IMG/VR virus record: IMGVR_UViG_3300038424_000251
Span: 248,001-312,000 of that record
DNA length: 64,000 bases
Reading direction: 5' to 3' (one strand)
Shown one piece after another: positions 7,149 through 22,125 of the stretch. The first letter of the stretch is position 1. Each line of letters begins with the position of its first letter. The translations under genes were made by a program, and so were the position numbers. Under the pieces are notes generated by a model that saw only the letters and a program-made list of their open reading frames with translations, did no database searches and was not told where the DNA came from.

Positions 7149-7385
7149 ATGAACTGTCTTTGTTATATGTTAAAATTGTGTATATTCCTTATAATTGCTT
7201 GTTGCTTAGTTCCTTTAGCATTAGGCATATTCCTCTTCTTTGGTGTTCTGGGAATAATTCTTTGCTTTACTCCATTATTACCACTTGGTATTTTGTCAAT
7301 TTTCTTGGCTTATTCGATGGTAATAGGAATATGGGCTATTTTAGCCAACTTGTTTTTTTACTTATTTAAACTTAACACAACATAA
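7149..7385 (+). CDS. hydrophobic membrane protein
   Basis: follows promoter 7112; almost entirely hydrophobic. Confidence 0.6.
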   Translation: MNCLCYMLKLCIFLIIACCLVPLALGIFLFFGVLGIILCFTPLLPLGILSIFLAYSMVIGIWAILANLFFYLFKLNTT

Positions 7386-7427
<42 letters not shown>

Positions 7428-12387: not shown

Positions 12388-12791
12388 GGGCGTGTAATGG
12401 TATCGATTTATCATAACAGTCATACAGAGCATGTAGAGGATTGGTCATCTGTGGCCTCTTAAAAAACGAAGACTAAACTAAATGCTAATCTAAATCGATT
12501 GGTAAATGCTGACTTTGCTTTTGAGGTTAATACCTTTGAGGAAGTCGCTGTAGCGGCCTAGTTTCCGCTCCGTCATGTTGAGTGATTCTCACTAATTCAA
12601 TAATGGCGTAAAACCGTGAGAAAACTGCTTGTGGTTAAAATTACAGGACTGGTTAGATTGGGCAGTTCTCAATCTAGGTTTGATAATTTTCTCAAATTTT
12701 GATATTAAACCGAAGTTTAAAGTTGATAAACATGTAGTGCTGGATGGGTGTAATGGTAAAAACACGGGTTCAATTCCCGTCACGTCCACCA
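12388..12791 (+). ncRNA. ssrA: tmRNA
   Basis: GGGCGTG/CACGTCC-A-CCA acceptor with G3:U70, T-arm acggg-ttcaatt-cccgt, tag ORF 12484-12561 ANLNRLVNADFAFEVNTFEEVAVAA; promoter TTGACA ~12344. Confidence 0.93.
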
Positions 12792-14916: not shown

Positions 14917-15807
14917 ATGTTAAATCTACCTAGTAAAGTAGAGGGTGCTAACGTTCTGCTGTGTGGTATGGGTGGTGGTTTTGATATTTACGGAACATTA
15001 CCTATTTATTACACGTTAACAAGAATGGGCATGAATTGTTTCTTTCATAGTCATCAATTTTCCCATTTAGTTTCTTCAATAGTTGATGAGAATGAACATG
15101 ATAGTTCATCTTTTTTGCCTGAAATTCCACTTGCCAAATTTATAAAGAAACCTATTTATATTGATGGTAGAGTTGGTCCTTCTATTCTCCGAAAAAGTTA
15201 TGAAAAGATAATTGAAAAACATAATATTGACCATGTTATTATGGTTGATTGTGGTGTGGATTCTTTAATGCATGGTGATGAAGAGTTTAAAGGAACTGTA
15301 GGAGAAGATTTTGTGGCTCTTGCAGCTTTTAAAAACATTCCAATAAAAAAGTGGTTGGTTGTTTTTGGATTTGGTTGTGAAGTTGAAGAACAAATTTCTC
15401 ATTATCATGCGTTGGAAAATATGGCAGAATTGATAAAAGATGATGCATTTCTTGGTTCTTGTTCTCTTACTAAAAATATGTCATCATTTCAATTTTACAA
15501 ATCTGCCTATGAAAACATAGCAAATCTTCCAAATTATAGAAAAAGTCATATTCATCCAAGAATAATACCTTCCATAGAAGGATTGGTTGGAGAAAAATGG
15601 TATCAAAATGAGTCATCTATATATCCTGAAGTTTTAGTATTCTTATCCCCATTAATGGGTATCATGTGGTTTTTTGATGGAGATGTTGTTATTAAAAAGA
15701 ATAATATTATTCCTCTATTGGAGAATCATTTTACTTTTGCGGAGTCAATATCGACTATTGAGGAAATGTCAATTCCTACAAGAATGTCTCAATCAATACC
15801 GTATTAA
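14917..15807 (+). CDS. DUF1152-family protein
   Basis: GMGGGFDIY, VDCGVDSLMHGDE..GTVGED, LSPLMGIMWFFD. Confidence 0.8.
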   Translation: MLNLPSKVEGANVLLCGMGGGFDIYGTLPIYYTLTRMGMNCFFHSHQFSHLVSSIVDENEHDSSSFLPEIPLAKFIKKPIYIDGRVGPSILRKSYEKIIEKHNIDHVIMVDCGVDSLMHGDEEFKGTVGEDFVALAAFKNIPIKKWLVVFGFGCEVEEQISHYHALENMAELIKDDAFLGSCSLTKNMSSFQFYKSAYENIANLPNYRKSHIHPRIIPSIEGLVGEKWYQNESSIYPEVLVFLSPLMGIMWFFDGDVVIKKNNIIPLLENHFTFAESISTIEEMSIPTRMSQSIPY

Positions 15808-15846
15808 ATATGGGAATCAAAATTGTAGCTGGAATATAATGATATT

Positions 15847-17043
15847 ATGAATAATATAGAATTAATGGTAAAATCCCTCAAAGGTTTGTGGGTTGGTGAT
15901 TGTATTGGAAATGTTGGACAGTTTTATTACGCTCAAGACATATTAAAAGCGTTGGATGAAGGAATTGCTAAATTTGGGATAGATAACATAGACCCTATGG
16001 GAAAATCATTCCAATATTCCGATGACACGGAAGAGGCAATCGTTTTGGTAAATCACTTGTTTAACAACAAGAAAATTTTACAAGATAAGTTAGCGATGGA
16101 ATGGGCAACTAGATATTATACCCGTGACCCTGATGGTGAAATTTATGGTTACGGATTGATGACTAGGAAAGTGTTAAAAGATATTTATGAGGGTAAACCT
16201 TGGAGAGAAGCAAATTTAACATTTCAGAGAGGCGAAAGTCCATCAAACATTGATGTGTTAATAGGTGATATTGCGCATGGTAAATCTGTCAAAGATGCTT
16301 TATCGGAATTAAGAAAAGATGGTAGTCAAAAATTTCTTCCACAAAAAGTTGGTTCGTGTGGTAATGGGTCTGCTATGAGAATTCCTCCATTGGGTGCGTA
16401 TTTTTATCTTTCTCCAATTGAAGAAGTTGTTAAACAAGCAACGTTATCAGCAGAACCAACTCATTGTCATCCGGAAGGGATTGCTGGTGCTATTGCTATT
16501 GCATCATTAGCAAAGTGTATTTCGTTGTCTGAATGGGTATATAAATCGGAAAAGGTGTTGAATACAAATTATGTCACAGATATGGATACCAAGAAAATCT
16601 ATGATTACATCTTGGAATTTATTCCTGATAGCCAAGTAAAAAAAGGTATTCTTAAAGCAAAGGAACTTCCATTGGACATACCTTTGATGAAACTGATTGA
16701 AATTTTAGGAAATGGAACATATGTTACTTGTCAAGATACAGTTCCATTATGTGTATTTTTAACAATACAGGCATTATCCTTATATCCATTAGATGAAATG
16801 TATGAAAAGGTTTTAATTGATACTTGTAAATGTTTTGGTGATGTTGATACAAATTGTGCTATTGTTGGTGGTATGATTGGAATTATCAGTTCTCCACCTG
16901 AAAAATGGATAAGATATTGTCAACCAATGGAAGGAGTAATGGGTGACCCGTTGCCTGAAATTACAACACAAAGAAAAAGAACAGAATACAATGTTAATAA
17001 AGATGCTATAAAAGACATACTGAACAATATAAAAGAAAAATAA
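15847..17043 (+). CDS. ADP-ribosylglycohydrolase
   Basis: GDCIG, YSDDTE, SCGNGSAMR, GDVDTNCAIVG. Confidence 0.9.
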   Translation: MNNIELMVKSLKGLWVGDCIGNVGQFYYAQDILKALDEGIAKFGIDNIDPMGKSFQYSDDTEEAIVLVNHLFNNKKILQDKLAMEWATRYYTRDPDGEIYGYGLMTRKVLKDIYEGKPWREANLTFQRGESPSNIDVLIGDIAHGKSVKDALSELRKDGSQKFLPQKVGSCGNGSAMRIPPLGAYFYLSPIEEVVKQATLSAEPTHCHPEGIAGAIAIASLAKCISLSEWVYKSEKVLNTNYVTDMDTKKIYDYILEFIPDSQVKKGILKAKELPLDIPLMKLIEILGNGTYVTCQDTVPLCVFLTIQALSLYPLDEMYEKVLIDTCKCFGDVDTNCAIVGGMIGIISSPPEKWIRYCQPMEGVMGDPLPEITTQRKRTEYNVNKDAIKDILNNIKEK

Positions 17044-17046
17044 TTT

Positions 17047-17895
17047 ATGATTGGAGCAATTATAGGAGATATAGTCGGTTCACCCTACGAAGGTGCTGGT
17101 CTTAATTTTGTAGATGATAGAAATTTTTCTTTGTTTGATGGAAGAAATTCACGTTTTACGGATGATACCGTTCTTACTTGCGCTACTGCTGATGCAATTT
17201 TACAAACATTTACTATTAATGATTCGCCTATAGGTTATCCTCCATTTGCAGAATTATACAAAAAGTGGGCGTCAAAATATCCAAATAAAGGATATGGAAG
17301 TGGATTTTATGAATGGGTTAGTGAAGGCGGAATTACAGTAAAGAATAGTTATGCAAATGGATGTATGATGCGTTGTAGTCCTATTGGTTTATACTATGAC
17401 GATTTTAATATAGCAAAATCTGTAGCATTAGAAAGTATCAGAATGACACATAATTCTCCAGAATCGGCTCGTGGAATTCAATCAATTGTTTCTGCCATTT
17501 ATATGGCATTGCATGGAAAGTCAAAATTACAAATTAAATCATATGTGGAAAAGAGTTTTGGTCATATGTTGAATATGACTGTTGAAGAACTACGATTGTT
17601 ACCAAAAACTACTATCAGATGTGATGTAACCGCTCCTCAAGCATTAATATGCTTTATGGAATCCACGGATTATGAGTCAGCCATTCGTAATGCAGTTTAT
17701 ACCAAGGGTGATACTGATACTATTGCAGCCATTGCAGGTTCCATTGCCGAAGCATTTTATGGTGTTCGTTCTATTCCTCAATCCACAATTGATAAAGCAA
17801 AACAAAGGTTGACGCCTGAAATAATTGAGTTAATAAACAAATTTTATTATACTATTGGAGAATATCATGAATCTTATAAGGATTTTATAATCTGA
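17047..17895 (+). CDS. ADP-ribosylglycohydrolase
   Basis: GAIIGDIVGS, FTDDT, SYANGCMMR, GDTDTIAAIAG. Confidence 0.93.
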   Translation: MIGAIIGDIVGSPYEGAGLNFVDDRNFSLFDGRNSRFTDDTVLTCATADAILQTFTINDSPIGYPPFAELYKKWASKYPNKGYGSGFYEWVSEGGITVKNSYANGCMMRCSPIGLYYDDFNIAKSVALESIRMTHNSPESARGIQSIVSAIYMALHGKSKLQIKSYVEKSFGHMLNMTVEELRLLPKTTIRCDVTAPQALICFMESTDYESAIRNAVYTKGDTDTIAAIAGSIAEAFYGVRSIPQSTIDKAKQRLTPEIIELINKFYYTIGEYHESYKDFII

Positions 17896-18054: not shown

Positions 18055-18606
18055 ATGAAATATATTAAAACATTAGTTGGTGCGTTATTTGCTATAGCAT
18101 TATTGTTATCAGTAACCGCAGTTTCTGCTGTTGACTTATCAACCAACGCAGCTGCTGTAGGTCCGTGGACATTTGCTCTAAGCGGTGGTGGTTCATCGGC
18201 AATTAATAACGATAAATTAAATAATTCTACTGTCGGTCTTAATCTTGAACTTGGTCATACTGGTAAGTTGCTTCTCCCTATTGAGGGCGGTATTCGCCAA
18301 GGTATAAGTTATTCAGATGTTACCGATAGTAGTTGGGCATTATCTACAAAAGCATACTTGGATCCAAGATTGTTTAGAATAGGTAATTTGCAATCTGATG
18401 CAGGTGTTAACATTGGTGCTGCTTATGGTGATCAACCGTTAAAATGGACTGCTGCTCCTGAGGCTGACCTTAGATTTTATTTGAAGAAAGATGTCAACCT
18501 TTTTGGTCGTATTGAAGCTCCATTTGACCTTAATGCTGCTAATGATACATTTGGTAGATTTGAAAATAAACTTAGCTATACAATTGGTCTTCAAGTTCTG
18601 TTCTAA
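18055..18606 (+). CDS. outer-membrane beta-barrel protein
   Basis: signal peptide, amphipathic strands, C-terminal YTIGLQVLF. Confidence 0.75.
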   Translation: MKYIKTLVGALFAIALLLSVTAVSAVDLSTNAAAVGPWTFALSGGGSSAINNDKLNNSTVGLNLELGHTGKLLLPIEGGIRQGISYSDVTDSSWALSTKAYLDPRLFRIGNLQSDAGVNIGAAYGDQPLKWTAAPEADLRFYLKKDVNLFGRIEAPFDLNAANDTFGRFENKLSYTIGLQVLF

Positions 18607-18640
18607 GAGTTACTTAAAAACTCAGGTTACAAGTTATAGA

Positions 18641-18677
18641 AAAAATCCGCTGAATTAAAACTCCAGCGGGTTTTTTA
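18641..18677 (+). terminator. intrinsic terminator
   Basis: ccgctg..cagcgg followed by a T tract. Confidence 0.8.
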
Positions 18678-18813
18678 TGCGAAAATAAAAAGGCTTGACA
18701 CTTTCCAAAAGTTTGATATACTTATAACCAGAATGAAGAACATCTTTACATAGATTTCGGAAAATGACAAAATCATTAATTCATTCATTCTATCTTCAAA
18801 TATTCACATTTTC

Positions 18814-18888
18814 GCTTCATTAGTTCAATGGCAAGAACAGGCGCCCCTAAACCGCCTTATAAGGGTTCAAGTCCCTTATGAAGCGCCA
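18814..18888 (+). tRNA. tRNA-like with CUA anticodon (amber suppressor-like)
   Basis: GCTTCAT/ATGAAGC-G-CCA; loop ccCTAaa; C31:C39 mismatch. Confidence 0.65.
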
Positions 18889-18892
18889 TTTT

Positions 18893-18962
18893 GGTCAAGT
18901 AATTTAAAAGCAGAACATCCTTTACGGGAAAGTAGTGCGTTCAAACCCACTCTTGACCACCA
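18893..18962 (+). ncRNA. degenerate tRNA-like RNA, shrunken anticodon arm
   Basis: GGTCAAG/CTTGACC-A-CCA, ttcaaac T loop. Confidence 0.6.
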
Positions 18963-18963
18963 C

Positions 18964-19018
18964 GGGCGGGATGGCGGTTTTGCCGTCTCACAACGTTCAA
19001 GTCGTTGCCCGCCCGCCA
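18964..19018 (+). ncRNA. 55-nt mini-tRNA (acceptor + one hairpin + T arm)
   Basis: GGGCGGG/CCCGCCC-G-CCA; caacg-ttcaagt-cgttg. Confidence 0.7.
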
Positions 19019-19082
19019 TTTACGCAAAATATTAAAGAGGCTTGACGTTTTCCAAAAATCTGATATAGTTATTGCTGATTAT

Positions 19083-19156
19083 GGGCAGTTAGTTTATCGG
19101 CAGAATAATACCTCGACACGGTATAGAGATAAGTTCAATTCTTATATTGCCCACCA
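19083..19156 (+). tRNA. tRNA-Val(GAC)
   Basis: atacc-tcGACac-ggtat; CCA. Confidence 0.85.
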
Positions 19157-19160
19157 ATTT

Positions 19161-19243
19161 AAGATACACACAGCAATAAAAAATTGTCTAGTTGTAGGAA
19201 ACAACATAAAAAGGTCCCTCAGAAAAGAGTAAATCGGTATCTT
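19161..19243 (+). ncRNA. CAGCAA-stem RNA copy 1
   Basis: aagatac..acagcaa...gtatctt. Confidence 0.7.
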
Positions 19244-19248
19244 GAAAT

Positions 19249-19325
19249 CAGAATGTAGCTTAGTTTGGGAAAGCGCAAGCTTCGGGAGCTTGAGAGCGTG
19301 AGTTCGAATCTCACCATTCTGACCA
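19249..19325 (+). tRNA. tRNA-Pro(CGG)
   Basis: caagc-ttCGGga-gcttg; CCA. Confidence 0.92.
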
Positions 19326-19406
19326 ATTTAGTCAAGGCTATCTTCAACAAGATGCCGAAACATCGGAGAGAGGCTTGACAAAAAGTGTGGATATGATAAA
19401 ATGTAT

Positions 19407-20502
19407 TCACGATTGAATTCGGAACGCTTTCGAATGAAATCATAATGGTTTGTGTTCATACGGTACGAAACGCCGAAAGGTAGTAGTTGTTCAGTCAACC
19501 GTATCATGTGTGCCGATGTAATGACGGCGTAAGTAAACAACACTATAGTTGTTCACACTATGAATATTTGTTCTTTGTCAGTAGATTTAACGGGGAGTAT
19601 CGTCTCCGTTGGAGTTGCCGCAAGGTGACTTCATAAAGATAAACCGTAGCAATACGGCCAAAGGGATGGCCCCTAACGGCCACTCACCAATCGCAAGGTT
19701 GGACACCGATACAACGAGCGAAATCTGTAAATATCATCCAAAAGATGGTGTTACACTTAAAGCTGGGATGGAAAATGGTATCTGAGGGTAACACTGTAAG
19801 ATATCTACTAACGATGCCGTCGAGCACTACCATCTGCCAAGCGCAACAGTGAGAGTTAAGATTTAAGCAAAGTAGTGAGGTTTGAGGCCAGCAACCAAAA
19901 GCTTCACTACAATCTGATAGAAACCGGCCAAGGCTCATACTGAGGACGGAATCTTGAAAGATGAATGAGTATCCGCAAGAGAAAGTTAGGACTTGTGTGG
20001 CATTTTGTATCTCCAAAAGGTATGAATCCACAGGCACCGCACAAGTTTGTTAGGTTGATATAGCTCAAAGTAGAGCAACTGTATTCAGCACAGTAGGCTG
20101 CCGGAGTCAAATCTGGCTATCTATTAAAAAACGCAAAGCCGGTGCCCGCGATGACTGAAAAAGTCTTAATTCTGGAGCCGCAAGGTAATTCAGACAACCG
20201 TAGCTCGCAAGGTGAAAGTTGTTCGTGTTGAAGGTAACGGAGAGGTTAGCCCCTCTTACTGCCCGCAAGGCAGACGTTAAATGAGACGCGGAATAGGTTG
20301 TCGTCAGGTTGGAAATGCCACCAACTAAATCAGGCAGACTTACCGGATAAACCATACGTTGTCCCGCAACGGTGGATTTGGATGAAGAGGAAGACTATCC
20401 GCAAGGTAGTGATAATCTTAGAAGGCCGGTACACAATGAGGTATTCTCACTCAAAGTAAATCACAAAATTGTCGAGATAGACCTTCGGGGAACGTTTCGT
20501 GA
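19407..20502 (+). ncRNA. giant structured ncRNA, GOLLD-like
   Basis: ~1.1 kb, GC-richer, no + strand ORF, many GCAA/GAAA tetraloop hairpins, promoter 19375, end pairing tcacga/tcgtga, terminator after it, located among tRNAs; family name is from recall. Confidence 0.7.
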
Positions 20503-20542
20503 TAATCCTTGACATTTTTTGTGAACTTTAATGATAATTTAT

Positions 20543-20576
20543 AAAATATGCCTAAATGTTTAGGCGTATTTTTTTT
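20543..20576 (+). terminator. intrinsic terminator
   Basis: atatgcctaa-atgt-ttaggcgtat + T tract. Confidence 0.75.
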
Positions 20577-20645
20577 CGAAATGTTGACTAAAAATTGCAA
20601 TATGATATAAATTGACAATTAGTATTTATACTATATAATATTACT

Positions 20646-21392
20646 ATGGTAGAAAAAACTATTACAATTTATGAAGGTGATTGTCTTAAAATTATGCCGG
20701 AAAAAGTATTTGATGAATCTGTGAATATGATTTTAGTTGATTTACCCTATGGGATTACACAGAATAAGTGGGATATTATAATACCATTCGATAAATTGTG
20801 GGAACAATATCATAGAATTATTAAACCCAATGGTGCCATGGTATTTACAGCAACTCAGCCATTTGCTAGCCGACTTGTTATGAGTAATCTTAAATTTTTT
20901 AGATATGATATAGTTTGGGAAAAAACTATTTCATCGGGACAAATGAATATAAATAATCAACCACTTCGAAGCCATGAATTGATTTTGGTCTTCTATAAAA
21001 AACTTCCAACTTATAACGAACAACGGACAAAGGGTACTCCTTATGAAATTAATCGTACAGGAAAATATAAAGCGGGAAGTTATAATCCTCAAAGACCGTC
21101 ATCTAAAAAAAATGACGGGTTTAGGCATGCTCGAAGTGTGATTAAGATTCCAAATCCAAGAATGAAAGATGGACATCCGACTCAAAAGCCAATAAAATTA
21201 TTGGAGTATTTGATAAAAACTTATACAAACGTAGGAGATGTTGTGATGGACAATTGTATGGGTGCAGGAACAACAGGTATAGCATGTCGAAATCTAAATC
21301 GAAAATTCATTGGAATTGAGATTGATAAGACATATTTTCAGAAAGCCAAGAAAGCATTAGACGAAGAAATATATAACCGTTTTTTTTCTTGA
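20646..21392 (+). CDS. N4/N6 DNA methyltransferase (beta class)
   Basis: DLPY, HPTQKP, DNCMGAGTTG. Confidence 0.92.
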   Translation: MVEKTITIYEGDCLKIMPEKVFDESVNMILVDLPYGITQNKWDIIIPFDKLWEQYHRIIKPNGAMVFTATQPFASRLVMSNLKFFRYDIVWEKTISSGQMNINNQPLRSHELILVFYKKLPTYNEQRTKGTPYEINRTGKYKAGSYNPQRPSSKKNDGFRHARSVIKIPNPRMKDGHPTQKPIKLLEYLIKTYTNVGDVVMDNCMGAGTTGIACRNLNRKFIGIEIDKTYFQKAKKALDEEIYNRFFS

Positions 21393-21456
21393 CCTTTTAT
21401 ATTTAATTTACGATAATAATTATTATTGATGTAAATTAAAATATACTAAATATGAA

Positions 21457-22125
21457 ATGAAACATACAAGAACATCAGCAGATCCAATAAAGGTGATAGA
21501 ATTACTAAATGAACTAAGTACCCCCGACCCCCGCTATATAGAACTGCGTGATATTATATATAATAGAAGAAATGAGAAGATGTTATTAGAACTTCCAATA
21601 ATTAGTTTTTTTCAATCTTTGTACTTTATGACTTCGCAGAAATATGGTTTTCTAATTCAAAAGAGAATAATAAAAGATATGGGTTATGGTCCCCCAAGAA
21701 ACAAGGATGCTGGGGATGCTTTTGGAAATGATAAGGATCAGGAAATAAAAGTTTCATTAATTACTTTGACTAACCCAAGTATTAATATAAGGCAGGTTCG
21801 TATGTGGCAAGGATGTGACTACAATATTTTAGGTGTAGATATGAGAGTTGCGGCTAATCCAACTATCTATTTTTTTAAACTTACACATTCTGATATGGAA
21901 CGTGAATTGGTTCTTTGTAAGGCAGGAAAAAGCCACACCCACGGAGAAGAAATGTCCCTTACTATTAACGTTGATAAAAGTGATGAACATTTTAATCGTT
22001 GGTGTAAAGATTACAGAATACCGTCTCCTTGGGATGATGAGTTAAATAAAAGATTTGTTCATTTTGCAAAAACGTTGCCCACGGTAACTGAGAATACCTT
22101 AATTCTAGAACCGCAAAATATATGA
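21457..22125 (+). CDS. putative PD-(D/E)xK restriction endonuclease
   Basis: GDA..DQEIKVS..NIRQVR; adjacent to MTase. Confidence 0.55.
   Translation: MKHTRTSADPIKVIELLNELSTPDPRYIELRDIIYNRRNEKMLLELPIISFFQSLYFMTSQKYGFLIQKRIIKDMGYGPPRNKDAGDAFGNDKDQEIKVSLITLTNPSINIRQVRMWQGCDYNILGVDMRVAANPTIYFFKLTHSDMERELVLCKAGKSHTHGEEMSLTINVDKSDEHFNRWCKDYRIPSPWDDELNKRFVHFAKTLPTVTENTLILEPQNI

What the first reader, a model, noticed from the sequence alone, without database searches (positions are those of the whole stretch)
19407..20502. ~1.1 kb GOLLD-like giant RNA
Seen: non-coding, GC-richer block with more than 10 GNRA-capped hairpins (e.g. ttgcc-gcaa-ggtga, ccgta-gcaa-tacgg, actatcc-gcaa-ggtagt), a dedicated promoter, paired ends and a terminator. 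Known: GOLLD and ROOL RNAs occur in phage tRNA clusters and their function is unresolved. The GOLLD assignment is from recalled sequence features, and this copy seems longer than typical.
Basis: partly seen in the sequence, partly recalled or inferred. Interest (0 to 1): 0.7.

Follow-up and report, generated by a model that had tools for sequence, protein, structure and literature searches.

The report
GOLLD RNA gene in jumbo phage
This stretch is a genuine, unusually long copy of GOLLD, a giant phage non-coding RNA known to build RNA-only nanocages of unknown function. It sits in the tRNA island of a 365-kb peat phage and is almost the only place where two otherwise identical phage genomes differ.

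Summary
Rfam's GOLLD model (RF02032, the conserved 3' domain) matches window 19988-20453 full length at 165.5 bits (cut-off 150). No intron, ROOL or other family fits.

- **Conservation:** thirteen relatives from peat and lake viromes share the RNA. 125 of 240 consensus pairs show compensatory changes. An extended -10 promoter is kept at the same place in all of them.
- **5' domain:** it carries the family-wide motif GAGGGUAACAC at the canonical distance from the 3' end.
- **Length:** the promoter-to-tail span is about 1,094 nt, against 915-977 nt in most clade members, 833 nt (env-38) and 700 nt (Sag) in solved GOLLDs. The excess comes from a roughly 100-nt leader expansion, one extra GCAA hairpin and a decayed tRNA-like insert in the linker.
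- **RNA evidence:** four metatranscriptomes hold contigs of close relatives over 19610-20470 only, so the full 1.1-kb transcript is not shown.
- **Unexpected:** against a second genome aligned over 189 kb, 40 of 54 differing positions lie in GOLLD 19908-20410, mostly structure-preserving.

Verdict: a new member of a known family. Function remains unknown.

The parts
19375..19402 (+). Dedicated sigma-70-type promoter: TTGACA, 16-nt spacer, TGaTAAAAT extended -10. The predicted start is about 19408-19410.
   Evidence: Consensus scan scores 11/12 with TG. TTGAC(A/G) or TTGCCA plus a TGnTAnnAT-type -10 (TG extension absent in L209) is kept at the same alignment position in L211, L210, L208, L221, L205, L136, L204, L209 and L206.
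19409..19567 (+). 5' leader of 159 nt. The first ~30 nt (UCACGAUUG, then a hairpin around UUCGGAACGC) are conserved in the subclade. The segment from about 19440 to 19560 is a lineage-specific expansion.
   Evidence: The leader is 159-164 nt in the window and L211, but 47-71 nt in nine other relatives. The 5' hairpin folds at -9.8 kcal/mol, z -3.0. No RNA contigs were laid here, and no RNA run was listed for it.
19568..19987 (+). GOLLD 5' domain core of 420 nt, closed by 19571-19575 pairing with about 19981-19985. It contains the family-wide motif GAGGGUAACAC at 19784-19794.
   Evidence: 51 of 95 predicted pairs show compensatory double changes in 12 sequences. The motif lies 589 nt upstream of the 3'-terminal pattern here and 587-640 nt upstream in 14 other GOLLD-pattern loci, with 0 in the downstream control. 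The same motif is in the env-38 sequence printed in the supplement of PMC12286853.
19607..19636 (+). It is an insertion shared only with L211.
   Evidence: Absent from L210, L208, L221, L205, L136, L204, L209 and L203 in the alignments. Folds at -13.0 kcal/mol, z -4.0.
19988..20453 (+). GOLLD 3' domain, the universally conserved half and the part modelled by Rfam.
   Evidence: RF02032 scores 165.5 bits (cut-off 150) over model 1-416. All nine relatives tested also pass, at 153.9-224 bits.
20054..20125 (+). tRNA-like insert in the variable linker after the first 3'-domain hairpin. The anticodon-loop sequence is AUUCAGC (nominal anticodon UCA), the T loop has 8 nt and one D-loop G is lost. It is probably a decayed tRNA rather than a decoder.
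   Evidence: The Rfam tRNA model scores 42.4 bits (cut-off 29) when the region is searched alone. ARAGORN does not call it even when relaxed. Homologous inserts are tRNA-Thr(UGU) with a canonical T loop in L136 and L204. In L002, L211 and L208 they are degraded forms with nominal anticodons UAU, UUA and AUA. L205, L209 and L203 have none.
20454..20502 (+). Conserved 3' tail (GAUAGACCUUCGGGGAAC...CGUGA) that can pair with the 5' end and leader.
   Evidence: Conserved in the window, L211, L210, L220, L208, L221 and L205. Leader-tail duplex is -25.4 kcal/mol in the window and -14 to -27 in relatives. The whole-RNA MFE pairs 19464-19481 with 20483-20500.
20509..20576 (+). Promoter-like site (TTGACA-18-GATAAT), followed directly by a hairpin and U8 terminator. 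This is the likely transcription stop for GOLLD in this genome.
   Evidence: In relatives the same promoter drives a long-arm tRNA gene. A variant with that tRNA coexists in the population: L218, and a loose end at 20527 in run X1.
19908..20410 (+). Allelic patch: 39 substitutions and 1 indel against the otherwise identical genome G001.
   Evidence: L212, L217 and L219 carry a third, recombinant haplotype. Unitigs of DNA run X1 break at the patch borders.

Best explanation
Window 19409 to about 20502 (or to the terminator near 20575) is the gene for a GOLLD RNA of a 365-kb jumbo phage from peat or wetland. It is embedded in the phage's island of 43 tRNA genes.

Shown:
- The 3' half is a full-length GOLLD 3' domain.
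- The 5' half is a covariation-supported structured domain carrying the family's GAGGGUAACAC motif at the canonical distance.
- A conserved extended -10 promoter sits directly upstream.
- RNA of close relatives is abundant in peat and soil metatranscriptomes, while the flanks are silent.

Inferred by homology with the solved env-38 and Sag GOLLDs: the RNA folds into two separate domains and self-assembles, without protein, into a closed homo-oligomeric cage of 10-14 copies. The 3' domains would form the rings, the 5' domains the caps, and the variable linker would point into the lumen. Here that linker holds a decayed tRNA-like module.

Length: this copy is about 120-180 nt longer than most of its clade and about 260 nt longer than env-38. 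Three lineage-specific insertions account for this: a leader expansion, one extra GCAA hairpin and the linker tRNA relic.

Function (inference, low confidence of about 0.3): a translation- or tRNA-linked role during infection. It could be a compartment or scaffold that holds, shields or sequesters tRNA-like RNA or ribosome-associated factors. The basis is the constant tRNA-array context, the repeated capture of tRNAs in the lumen-facing linker, and the ribosome pull-down reported in the literature.

The 503-nt allelic patch is best read as replacement of part of the gene by homologous recombination with a sister GOLLD allele circulating in the same habitat. Both alleles are kept functional by selection on structure.
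For: Family membership:
- RF02032 scores 165.5 bits (cut-off 150) over the full model.
- It is the single copy in the genome.
- Nine relatives score 153.9-224 bits, all inside tRNA arrays.

Structure:
- The whole core 19560-20510 has 240 consensus pairs, 125 of them with compensatory changes.
- 93.4% of cells are paired, against 36-41% paired and 27-44 compensatory pairs when partners are slid by 1-3 columns.
- The 5' core alone has 51 of 95 compensatory pairs.

5' domain homology: the motif lies 589 nt upstream of the 3' pattern here and 587-640 nt upstream in 14 other loci, with none in the control. It is present in the printed env-38 sequence.

Promoter: conserved in position in all clade members.

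Lengths: with the solved sizes of 833 and 700 nt from PMC12990946.

RNA:
- Four RNA libraries have contigs at 85-99% identity over 19610-20470, summed depth up to about 535 per 100-nt bin.
- They have zero depth over 18600-19600 and 20519-21600.
- DNA runs cover everything evenly.
- RNA contigs run across both borders of the tRNA-like insert, so it stays inside the transcript.

Nanocage, lumen-facing linker, tRNAs in linkers and ribosome pull-down: PMC12286853 and PMC12990946.

Patch:
- 40 of 54 differing positions in 189,165 aligned bp.
- Changes are split between both branches, 19 against 14.
- Many preserve pairing: A-U to G-C at 20394/20410, G.U to A.C at 20153/20299 and 20226/20288, and G-C to A-U in the T stem at 20100/20117.
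- A recombinant haplotype exists in L212, L217 and L219.
Against: - The Rfam score is only 15 bits above the cut-off, the third lowest of the ten clade sequences scored.
- No RNA contig covers 19408-19609 or anything beyond about 20470, and an adapter-joined contig end sits at 19600. The stable RNA could therefore be about 860-900 nt, with the leader and tail removed or never made.
- RNA contigs come from relatives and haplotypes (mostly 90-99% identical), not provably from this genome.
- The end-to-end pairing has no covariation support.
- Oligomer state and any function are not testable here. GOLLD variants with different 5' elements assemble with different stoichiometry (PMC12990946), so 14-mer, 12-mer or another state cannot be predicted.
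- For the patch, one recombination event landing by chance in a 1.1-kb gene out of 189 kb is unlikely (about 0.6%), so selection or a hot spot must be added.
- In other near-identical locus pairs the GOLLD region is not a hot spot.
Confidence: 0.85

Rival explanations
1. The mature, stable GOLLD here is of ordinary size (about 860-900 nt, roughly 19570/19600 to 20470). On this reading the 160-190-nt 5' stretch is a transcribed leader that is cleaved off, or the true start lies further downstream, so 'longer than typical' is a property of the gene and not of the RNA.
For: - RNA contigs in four libraries begin at about 19600-19640 and end at about 20440-20470, with none in 19408-19600.
- An adapter-joined contig end lies at 19600 in X19.
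- No RNA run was listed for the leader alone.
- Clade-wide sequence conservation begins only at 19568.
- The 5' core is closed by its own helix, 19571-19575 with about 19981-19985.
Against: - The promoter is conserved about 50-160 nt upstream of the core in every relative. The first ~30 transcribed nt and the 3' tail are conserved in the subclade.
- The leader is too variable among relatives for their contigs to be laid on this sequence, so zero depth is not evidence of absence.
- A second, weaker promoter-like site at 19575-19603 scores only 9/12.
Confidence: 0.35
2. The allelic patch 19908-20410 reflects diversifying selection or locally raised mutation on the GOLLD 3' domain, not a single imported recombination tract. 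Possible drivers are an arms race with a host or rival-phage factor that recognises the cage, or selection for allele-specific self-assembly.
For: - The patch is nearly the only divergence in 189 kb, about a 3000-fold excess in density.
- At least four haplotypes exist, including further variants at 19838-19894 and 20027 in runs X18 and X20, on identical flanks.
- Alleles coexist within one sample.
- Derived changes lie on both branches.
Against: - Most changes are structure-neutral or compensatory rather than concentrated in loops.
- The haplotype in L212 and the different downstream linkage in L218 show recombination at work.
- The L210/L220 pair shows the reverse pattern, with an identical GOLLD core and diverged flanks.
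- Other near-identical pairs show GOLLD equal to or more conserved than the flanks.
- There is no reverse transcriptase and no template repeat, so it is not a diversity-generating retroelement.
Confidence: 0.25
3. The linker insert 20054-20125 is a working opal-suppressor tRNA (anticodon UCA). It would be stored in or released from the GOLLD RNA and complement the tRNA(CUA) at 18814.
For: - The tRNA model scores 42.4 bits, above its cut-off.
- The T stem keeps pairing through compensatory changes between alleles.
- Embedded tRNAs are known in GOLLD linkers, and an 'inhibited storage' idea has been published (PMC12990946).
- A CUA-anticodon tRNA lies 1.2 kb upstream.
Against: - ARAGORN rejects it even when relaxed.
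- It has an 8-nt T loop without the U54-psi55-C56 pattern, one D-loop G lost, G37 after a UCA anticodon, a U.U mismatch in the acceptor stem and no CCA.
- The nominal anticodon differs in every close relative (UAU, UUA, AUA, UGU), and tRNA scores fall from 61 to 36 bits across the clade, the pattern of a decaying relic.
- The genome uses TGA as an ordinary stop: 40 of 204 long ORFs end in it, and only one in-frame TGA junction of long ORFs was found.
- RNA contigs run through both tRNA borders.
Confidence: 0.07
4. The region is not GOLLD but another large structured RNA (group I or II intron, ROOL) or a protein-coding gene missed because of an unusual code.
For: Only the general look: it is large, GC-richer, rich in GNRA loops and sits in a phage tRNA cluster, which also fits ROOL.
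Against: - At E <= 10 nothing but GOLLD and the internal tRNA reaches its family's gathering score. No intron or ROOL match appears; the other three matches are far below their cut-offs.
- No ORF exceeds 117 aa and there is no Pfam match.
- Genome-wide there is no sign of stop-codon recoding.
- Substitutions covary as base pairs.
Confidence: 0.02

Closest known systems
GOLLD RNA env-38 (marine metagenome; 833 nt; cryo-EM 14-mer nanocage, PDB 9MEE; PMC12286853)
   Same: The two-domain plan is the same. The 3' domain fits the same Rfam model over its full length. The GAGGGUAACAC motif, preceded by an A-rich-loop hairpin, lies about 590-630 nt before the 3' end. A variable linker follows the first 3'-domain hairpin. 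The gene lies next to tRNA genes. GNRA loops are numerous.
   Different: About 260 nt longer from promoter to tail. About 375 nt lie upstream of the motif, against about 140 in env-38. This copy has an extra GCAA hairpin at 19607-19636, a tRNA-like module in the linker (env-38 has a 42-nt disordered linker), and a conserved 3' tail beyond the Rfam model. The habitat is a peat jumbo phage. The oligomer state is unknown.
Streptococcus agalactiae GOLLD (700 nt; 12-mer, PDB 9L0R; the 3' domain alone forms a 10-mer; cited in PMC12990946)
   Same: It has the same conserved 3' domain. It also shows that changes in 5'-domain elements alter stoichiometry, which bears on this expanded copy.
   Different: Sag lacks several 5' elements (P9, P11a-c, P21b) and is about 400 nt shorter. 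This copy goes the other way and adds elements.
Mycobacterium / Mycolicibacterium GOLLD in tRNA arrays, with tRNA-Phe inside J13/15 (Morgado et al. 2020, as cited in PMC12990946)
   Same: A tRNA is embedded in the same lumen-facing linker, and the gene lies inside a tRNA array.
   Different: Here the insert derives from a tRNA-Thr(UGU), still intact in L136 and L204. In the window's subclade it has decayed into a tRNA-like relic with a drifting anticodon loop. The context is a phage, not a bacterial or plasmid array.
ROOL RNA (RF03087; about 550-600 nt; 6- or 8-mer nanocages)
   Same: It works alike: a phage or prophage RNA near tRNA islands that forms RNA-only cages with an internal disordered linker.
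   Different: Its sequence and fold are unrelated, and there is no Rfam match here at E <= 10.

Membership tests
GOLLD RNA (Rfam RF02032) | Conserved 3' domain matching the curated covariance model at or above the gathering score | tested here: met
   165.5 bits against 150, E 1.2e-44, model 1-416 of 416 without truncation, at window 19988-20453 on the plus strand. Relatives score 153.9-224 bits.
GOLLD RNA (Rfam RF02032) | Structured but less conserved 5' domain directly upstream of the 3' domain | tested here: met
   In 19568-19987, 51 of 95 pairs are compensatory. The GAGGGUAACAC motif is shared with env-38 and with 14 other loci at the same distance from the 3' end. An HMM of this clade's 5' domain finds no other 5' domain among eight further 3'-domain hits, as expected for a variable domain.
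GOLLD RNA (Rfam RF02032) | Variable linker after the first 3'-domain hairpin, sometimes holding a tRNA | tested here: met
   The linker 20049-20146 is 98 nt here and 59-99 nt in relatives. A tRNA model hit lies at 20054-20125. Intact tRNA-Thr occupies the same place in L136 and L204.
GOLLD RNA (Rfam RF02032) | Encoded by phages or prophages, usually beside tRNA genes | tested here: met
   The genome is a 365,299-bp virus record. tRNA-Pro ends 84 nt upstream, and the window holds 43 tRNA genes. All relatives lie in tRNA arrays.
GOLLD RNA (Rfam RF02032) | Expressed as a discrete abundant RNA (in culture, rising during phage lysis) | tested here: inconclusive
   Metatranscriptome contigs of close variants cover 19610-20470 at high depth with silent flanks. 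They are contigs of relatives, without strand, ends or infection timing.
GOLLD RNA (Rfam RF02032) | Protein-free self-assembly into a closed homo-oligomeric nanocage (10-14 copies) | not testable with these tools
   Known for env-38 and Sag GOLLD (PMC12286853, PMC12990946). It needs in vitro transcription plus mass photometry or cryo-EM.
ROOL RNA | Match to the ROOL covariance model | tested here: not met
   No ROOL match at E <= 10 in 19330-20600 on either strand.
Group I / group II introns | Match to intron covariance models; interrupted host gene | tested here: not met
   No intron family at E <= 10. The flanks are a tRNA gene and a methylase gene with their own promoters, not exon halves.
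Functional tRNA (for the insert 20054-20125) | Canonical cloverleaf with a 7-nt T loop, G18G19, U33, and a stable anticodon among orthologs | tested here: not met
   The covariance model is passed (42.4 bits). However, the T loop has 8 nt and the D loop reads AAAGUA. ARAGORN is negative at default and relaxed settings. The anticodon loop differs in each relative.
Diversity-generating retroelement (for the patch 19908-20410) | Reverse transcriptase plus a template repeat, with adenine-directed changes | tested here: not met
   No PF00078 match in the genome. No second copy of the patch. 33 of 39 changes are transitions of all four kinds.

The most novel reading that the evidence does not exclude
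The GOLLD gene is the one locus under diversifying or balancing selection in an otherwise clonal jumbo-phage population. Several structure-preserving alleles of the ring-forming 3' domain and its lumen-facing tRNA-like module would then be maintained side by side. The cage would either be the direct target of a host or rival-phage factor, or the alleles would assemble only with their own kind. That would make GOLLD a player in phage-host or phage-phage conflict and give a handle on its unknown function.
Probability: 0.2. Interest if true: 0.8.

Novelty: new member of a known kind. Interest (0 to 1): 0.45.

Why it matters
GOLLD is among the largest bacterial and phage non-coding RNAs, and its function is still unknown even though its nanocage structure was solved in 2025.

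This locus adds a well-delimited clade of 13 distinct sequences from peat, wetland and lake viromes. The clade has a conserved promoter and strong covariation in both domains. It also shows graded series of insertions: a leader of 47-164 nt, an optional GCAA hairpin, and a linker that is empty, holds an intact tRNA-Thr or holds a decayed tRNA. Such natural variants are ready-made constructs for asking how added 5' elements and linker cargo change cage stoichiometry and contents.

The metatranscriptome signal shows that these RNAs are abundant in nature, not only in culture.

Almost all sequence difference between two 189-kb genome copies sits in this gene, mostly as structure-preserving changes. 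That is an unexplained population-genetic clue worth following with long reads.

As an annotation result it is ordinary: any Rfam scan would label it GOLLD.

Tried and rejected
- **Public phage records:** blastn of 19350-20600 against 50,697 records found no match.
- **Methylase neighbour as synteny anchor:** it is a widespread family. Of the 80 loci kept (of 287 confirmed relatives), only L002 was a true relative.
- **Exact 28-mer of the 5' domain in viral contigs:** it found only the same second genome.
- **Single-sequence and clade HMM searches of the 119 pattern-hit loci:** nhmmer found only 10 with a 3' domain and one with this 5' domain. The short motif search was more telling.
- **Alternative genetic code, prompted by the CUA and UCA tRNAs:** rejected. 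Long ORFs end in TAA 153, TGA 40 and TAG 11 times. Only one TGA and no TAG joins two long same-frame ORFs.
- **Diversity-generating retroelement as the cause of the patch:** rejected, with no reverse transcriptase and no template repeat.
- **Assembly artefact as the cause of the patch:** rejected. The flanks are identical in both genomes. Three independent contigs carry a third haplotype. Unitigs of DNA run X1 split exactly at the patch borders with reduced depth.
- **GOLLD as a general microdiversity hot spot:** not supported in 16 other near-identical locus pairs. Not all of those are verified GOLLDs.
- **Strict counting of GNRA hairpins (4 or more contiguous pairs):** it found only 3, because many stems have bulges or 2-3-bp tips. 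It was replaced by a relaxed count and by the consensus structure.
- **RNA run search with the leader alone:** none was listed.
- **Quantitative alignment to env-38:** not done, because its sequence is available only as printed text and was not retyped. Only motifs were compared by eye.
- **Thermodynamic folding of the tRNA-like insert:** it gives two long hairpins, not a cloverleaf, which is uninformative.
Full report
**Setting.** The window is bases 248,001-312,000 of a 365,299-bp IMG/VR virus record (33.3% GC, CheckV 100% complete). DNA runs that hold the locus are peat and wetland metagenomes. The window carries 43 tRNA genes and a tmRNA, all on the plus strand. The finding lies between tRNA-Pro(CGG) (19249-19325) and an N6/N4 DNA methylase gene (20646-21392).

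**Observation.**
- The block holds no ORF above 117 aa, and that one has no Pfam match.
- GC rises to 0.43-0.50, against 0.22-0.36 in the neighbouring genes.
- Eight clear GCAA-capped hairpins have loops at 19620, 19649, 19693, 19975, 20180, 20207, 20265 and 20401. A GAAA hairpin lies at 19475.
- A relaxed automatic count gives 13 GNRA hairpins, against 3.7 +/- 1.8 in 1000 dinucleotide shuffles. GCAA occurs 14 times against about 6 expected.
- A near-consensus promoter (TTGACA, 16 nt, TGaTAAAAT) lies at 19375-19402.
- A hairpin plus U8 terminator lies at 20544-20576 (-12.5 kcal/mol, z -4.8).
- The ends can pair.

'More than 10' GNRA hairpins is a little generous, and the terminator lies about 50 nt past the stated end.

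**Identity.** Rfam's GOLLD model, which covers the conserved 3' domain, matches 19988-20453 at 165.5 bits (gathering score 150, E 1e-44) over all 416 model positions. At E <= 10 the only other match above its family's cut-off is a tRNA hit inside the linker. There is no intron and no ROOL, only three matches far below their cut-offs. It is the only GOLLD in the genome.

**Relatives.** One 28-mer and one conserved 25-mer pattern brought in relatives from viral and metagenome contigs. After removing duplicates there are 13 distinct sequences, spanning about 59-99% identity to the window across the core.
- All nine relatives tested pass the Rfam cut-off (153.9-224 bits), and all lie in tRNA arrays.
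- On a MAFFT alignment of the core (19560-20510), the RNAalifold consensus has 240 pairs. Of these, 125 have compensatory double changes and 93.4% of cells are paired.
- Sliding the 3' partners by 1-3 columns gives 27-44 such pairs and 36-41% paired.
- The 5' core alone (19568-19987) has 51 of 95 compensatory pairs.

**Is the 5' half the family's 5' domain?**
- An HMM of this clade's 5' domain finds nothing upstream of eight other 3'-domain hits. That fits the literature's 'variable 5' domain'.
- The invariant block CUGAGGGUAACACUGUAAG contains an 11-nt motif that also stands in the env-38 GOLLD sequence printed in the supplement of PMC12286853. There it is likewise preceded by a hairpin with an A-rich loop.
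- Among 119 loci fetched with a 3'-terminal GOLLD pattern, 14 carry the motif (at most 1 mismatch) 587-640 nt upstream of the pattern, and none carry it downstream. In the window the distance is 589 nt.

The 5' domain is therefore homologous to the canonical one. The extra material lies on its 5' side.

**Length.** The span from the predicted start (19409) to the end of the conserved tail (20502) is as follows:

| Sequence | Total (nt) | Leader (nt) | Linker (nt) |
|---|---|---|---|
| Window | 1,094 | 159 | 98 |
| L211 | 1,094 | 164 | 94 |
| Other nine relatives | 915-977 | 47-71 | 59-61 where the tRNA is absent |

- An additional GCAA hairpin (19607-19636) is shared only with L211.
- Solved GOLLDs are 833 nt (env-38) and 700 nt (Sag) (PMC12990946).
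- The promoter is kept at the same alignment position in every clade member: TTGAC(A/G) or TTGCCA, 16-17 nt, then a TGnTAnnAT-type -10, with the TG extension absent in L209.
- The first ~30 transcribed nt and the 3' tail GAUAGACCUUCGGGGAAC...CGUGA are conserved within the subclade.
- Leader and tail can form a duplex (-25.4 kcal/mol here, -14 to -27 in relatives). The terminal UCAC/GUGA pairs never vary, so they prove nothing.

**Transcripts.**
- Four metatranscriptomes (peat, wetland, soil) hold contigs at 85-99% identity that tile 19610-20470, with summed word depths up to about 535 per 100-nt bin.
- The same libraries have zero depth over 18600-19600 and 20519-21600.
- DNA runs cover the whole 3 kb evenly, so this is RNA and not carried-over DNA.
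- Contigs cross both borders of the linker insert, for example 19960-20130 and 20075-20212. The insert therefore stays in the RNA.
- Nothing covers the 160-200-nt leader, and one contig in X19 joins an Illumina adapter to position 19600. No RNA run was listed for the leader alone.
- Because the leader differs between relatives, this silence is not decisive. The full 1.1-kb transcript remains inferred.

**The linker insert.**
- Searched alone, 20054-20125 matches the tRNA model at 42.4 bits (cut-off 29). ARAGORN does not call it, even when relaxed.
- In L136 and L204 the same position holds a canonical tRNA-Thr(UGU).
- In the window's subclade the T loop is 6 or 8 nt. The anticodon loop reads AUUCAGC (window), AUUAUAC (L002, L210, L221), AAUUAGA (L211) or AUAUAAC (L208).
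- tRNA scores fall from 61 to 36 bits across the clade. L205, L209 and L203 have no insert.
- This is the picture of a captured tRNA gene decaying into a tRNA-like module.
- The nominal UCA anticodon here should not be read as an opal suppressor. The genome uses TGA as a normal stop and shows no recoding.

**An unexpected population feature.** A second virus record (G001, 189,152 bp, from another sample) aligns with this genome over 189,165 bp at 99.97% identity.
- Of 54 differing columns, 40 (39 substitutions and 1 indel) lie in 19908-20410. This patch covers the last two hairpins of the 5' domain, the tRNA-like insert and most of the 3' domain.
- The remaining 188.6 kb hold two SNPs, a 3-nt indel and a 9-nt indel.
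- 33 of the 39 substitutions are transitions.
- Polarised with five outgroups, 19 sites have the outgroup state in the window, 14 have it in L002 and 7 are ties, so derived changes lie on both branches.
- Many preserve pairing: A-U to G-C at 20394/20410, G-C to A-U in the T stem at 20100/20117, several G.U/G-C switches, and two G.U to A.C double changes at 20153/20299 and 20226/20288.
- L212, L217 and L219 carry a third haplotype, L002-like at 19908-19980 and window-like afterwards.
- L218 links the L002 allele to a different downstream arrangement.
- Runs X18 and X20 show further variants at 19838-19894 and 20027 on identical flanks.
- In DNA run X1 the unitigs break at 19907/19908 and at 20411-20440, with depth dropping from about 19 to 6-18. 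The alleles therefore coexist in one sample.

There is no reverse transcriptase and no template repeat in the genome, so this is not a diversity-generating retroelement. In 16 other near-identical locus pairs the GOLLD region is no hot spot. The L210/L220 pair shows the converse, an identical GOLLD core with diverged flanks.

I read this as exchange of GOLLD segments by homologous recombination among co-circulating phages, with both alleles held functional. Confidence is about 0.6. Local diversifying selection remains open at about 0.25.

**How it most likely works.**
- Shown: family membership, covariation-supported two-domain fold, a conserved promoter, and abundance of the RNA in nature.
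- Inferred from the solved homologs (PMC12286853, PMC12990946): protein-free assembly into a closed cage of 10-14 copies. The 3' domains would form two rings, the 5' domains the caps, and the linker would point inward. Here the linker would display one tRNA-like module per subunit.
- Not predictable: how the added leader and hairpin change stoichiometry. Differences in 5' elements are known to do so.
- Function: unknown. The tRNA-array context, the repeated capture of tRNAs in the lumen-facing linker and the published ribosome pull-down point to a translation- or tRNA-linked role in infection. I hold this at about 0.3.

**Verdict.** This is a bona fide GOLLD RNA gene and a new member of a known family. 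It belongs to a peat and lake virome clade and is the longest form within it. As an annotation it is ordinary. The allelic patch, the tRNA decay series and the environmental expression give it moderate added interest.

Noticed in passing
window 18814-18888 (+); also L136:661-733: A tRNA with anticodon CUA (amber suppressor; ARAGORN labels it 'Pyl', Rfam tRNA 54.8 bits) lies about 520 nt upstream of the GOLLD promoter (its 3' end to 19409). In the relative L136 a CUA tRNA lies directly upstream of its GOLLD. The genome nevertheless uses the standard code: long ORFs end in TAA 153, TGA 40 and TAG 11 times, and no TAG joins two long ORFs.
   Followed up: partly
window 12388-12791 (+): A phage-encoded tmRNA (Rfam 103.6 bits; tag ANLNRLVNADFAFEVNTFEEVAVAA) lies at the head of the island of 43 tRNA genes that spans 18814-47096.
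   Followed up: no
window 20509-20576; variant junction at 20527: A promoter-like site is followed at once by a terminator with no gene between them. In relatives the same promoter drives a long-arm tRNA gene. A population variant (L218, and a loose end in DNA run X1) diverges from the window at 20527 and continues into such a tRNA. This is a structural polymorphism just downstream of GOLLD.
   Followed up: partly
window 22063-22125 (+): A roughly 60-nt stretch is 76% identical over its 51-nt best blastn segment to GOLLD 20133-20183, the junction and first hairpin after the linker. It sits inside the 3' end of an ORF of unknown function (21457-22125), just before tRNA-Leu. It may be a relic of a second GOLLD or a recombination footprint.
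   Followed up: partly
window 19600: In RNA run X19 a contig joins an Illumina adapter directly to position 19600, inside the conserved hairpin 19592-19607. This may mark a frequent RNA end or only a fragmentation site.
   Followed up: no
window 14917-17895 (+): A DUF1152 gene is followed by two tandem ADP-ribosylglycohydrolase genes (Pfam E about 1e-35 each), just upstream of the tRNA and GOLLD block. These may belong to an ADP-ribosylation counter-defence or regulation module.
   Followed up: no
window 7178 and 7388-7390; genome 111569 and 151688-151696: These are the only differences outside GOLLD between this genome and G001 over 189 kb. They comprise two SNPs, a 3-nt indel in or next to a small ORF (7149-7385), and a 9-nt indel.
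   Followed up: no
window 19298-19330: In three DNA runs, contigs from other organisms share only the 3' part of tRNA-Pro and then run on unlike sequence. This shows a conserved tRNA segment shared with other community members, the kind of homology that could seed recombination in the island.
   Followed up: no
L210 vs L220 (relatives): Two related contigs have an identical GOLLD core (L210:4284-5160). They differ in clusters just upstream (7 sites) and in the 3' tail and next promoter (14 sites), and are only 86% identical further downstream. This is the mirror image of the window/L002 pattern.
   Followed up: partly
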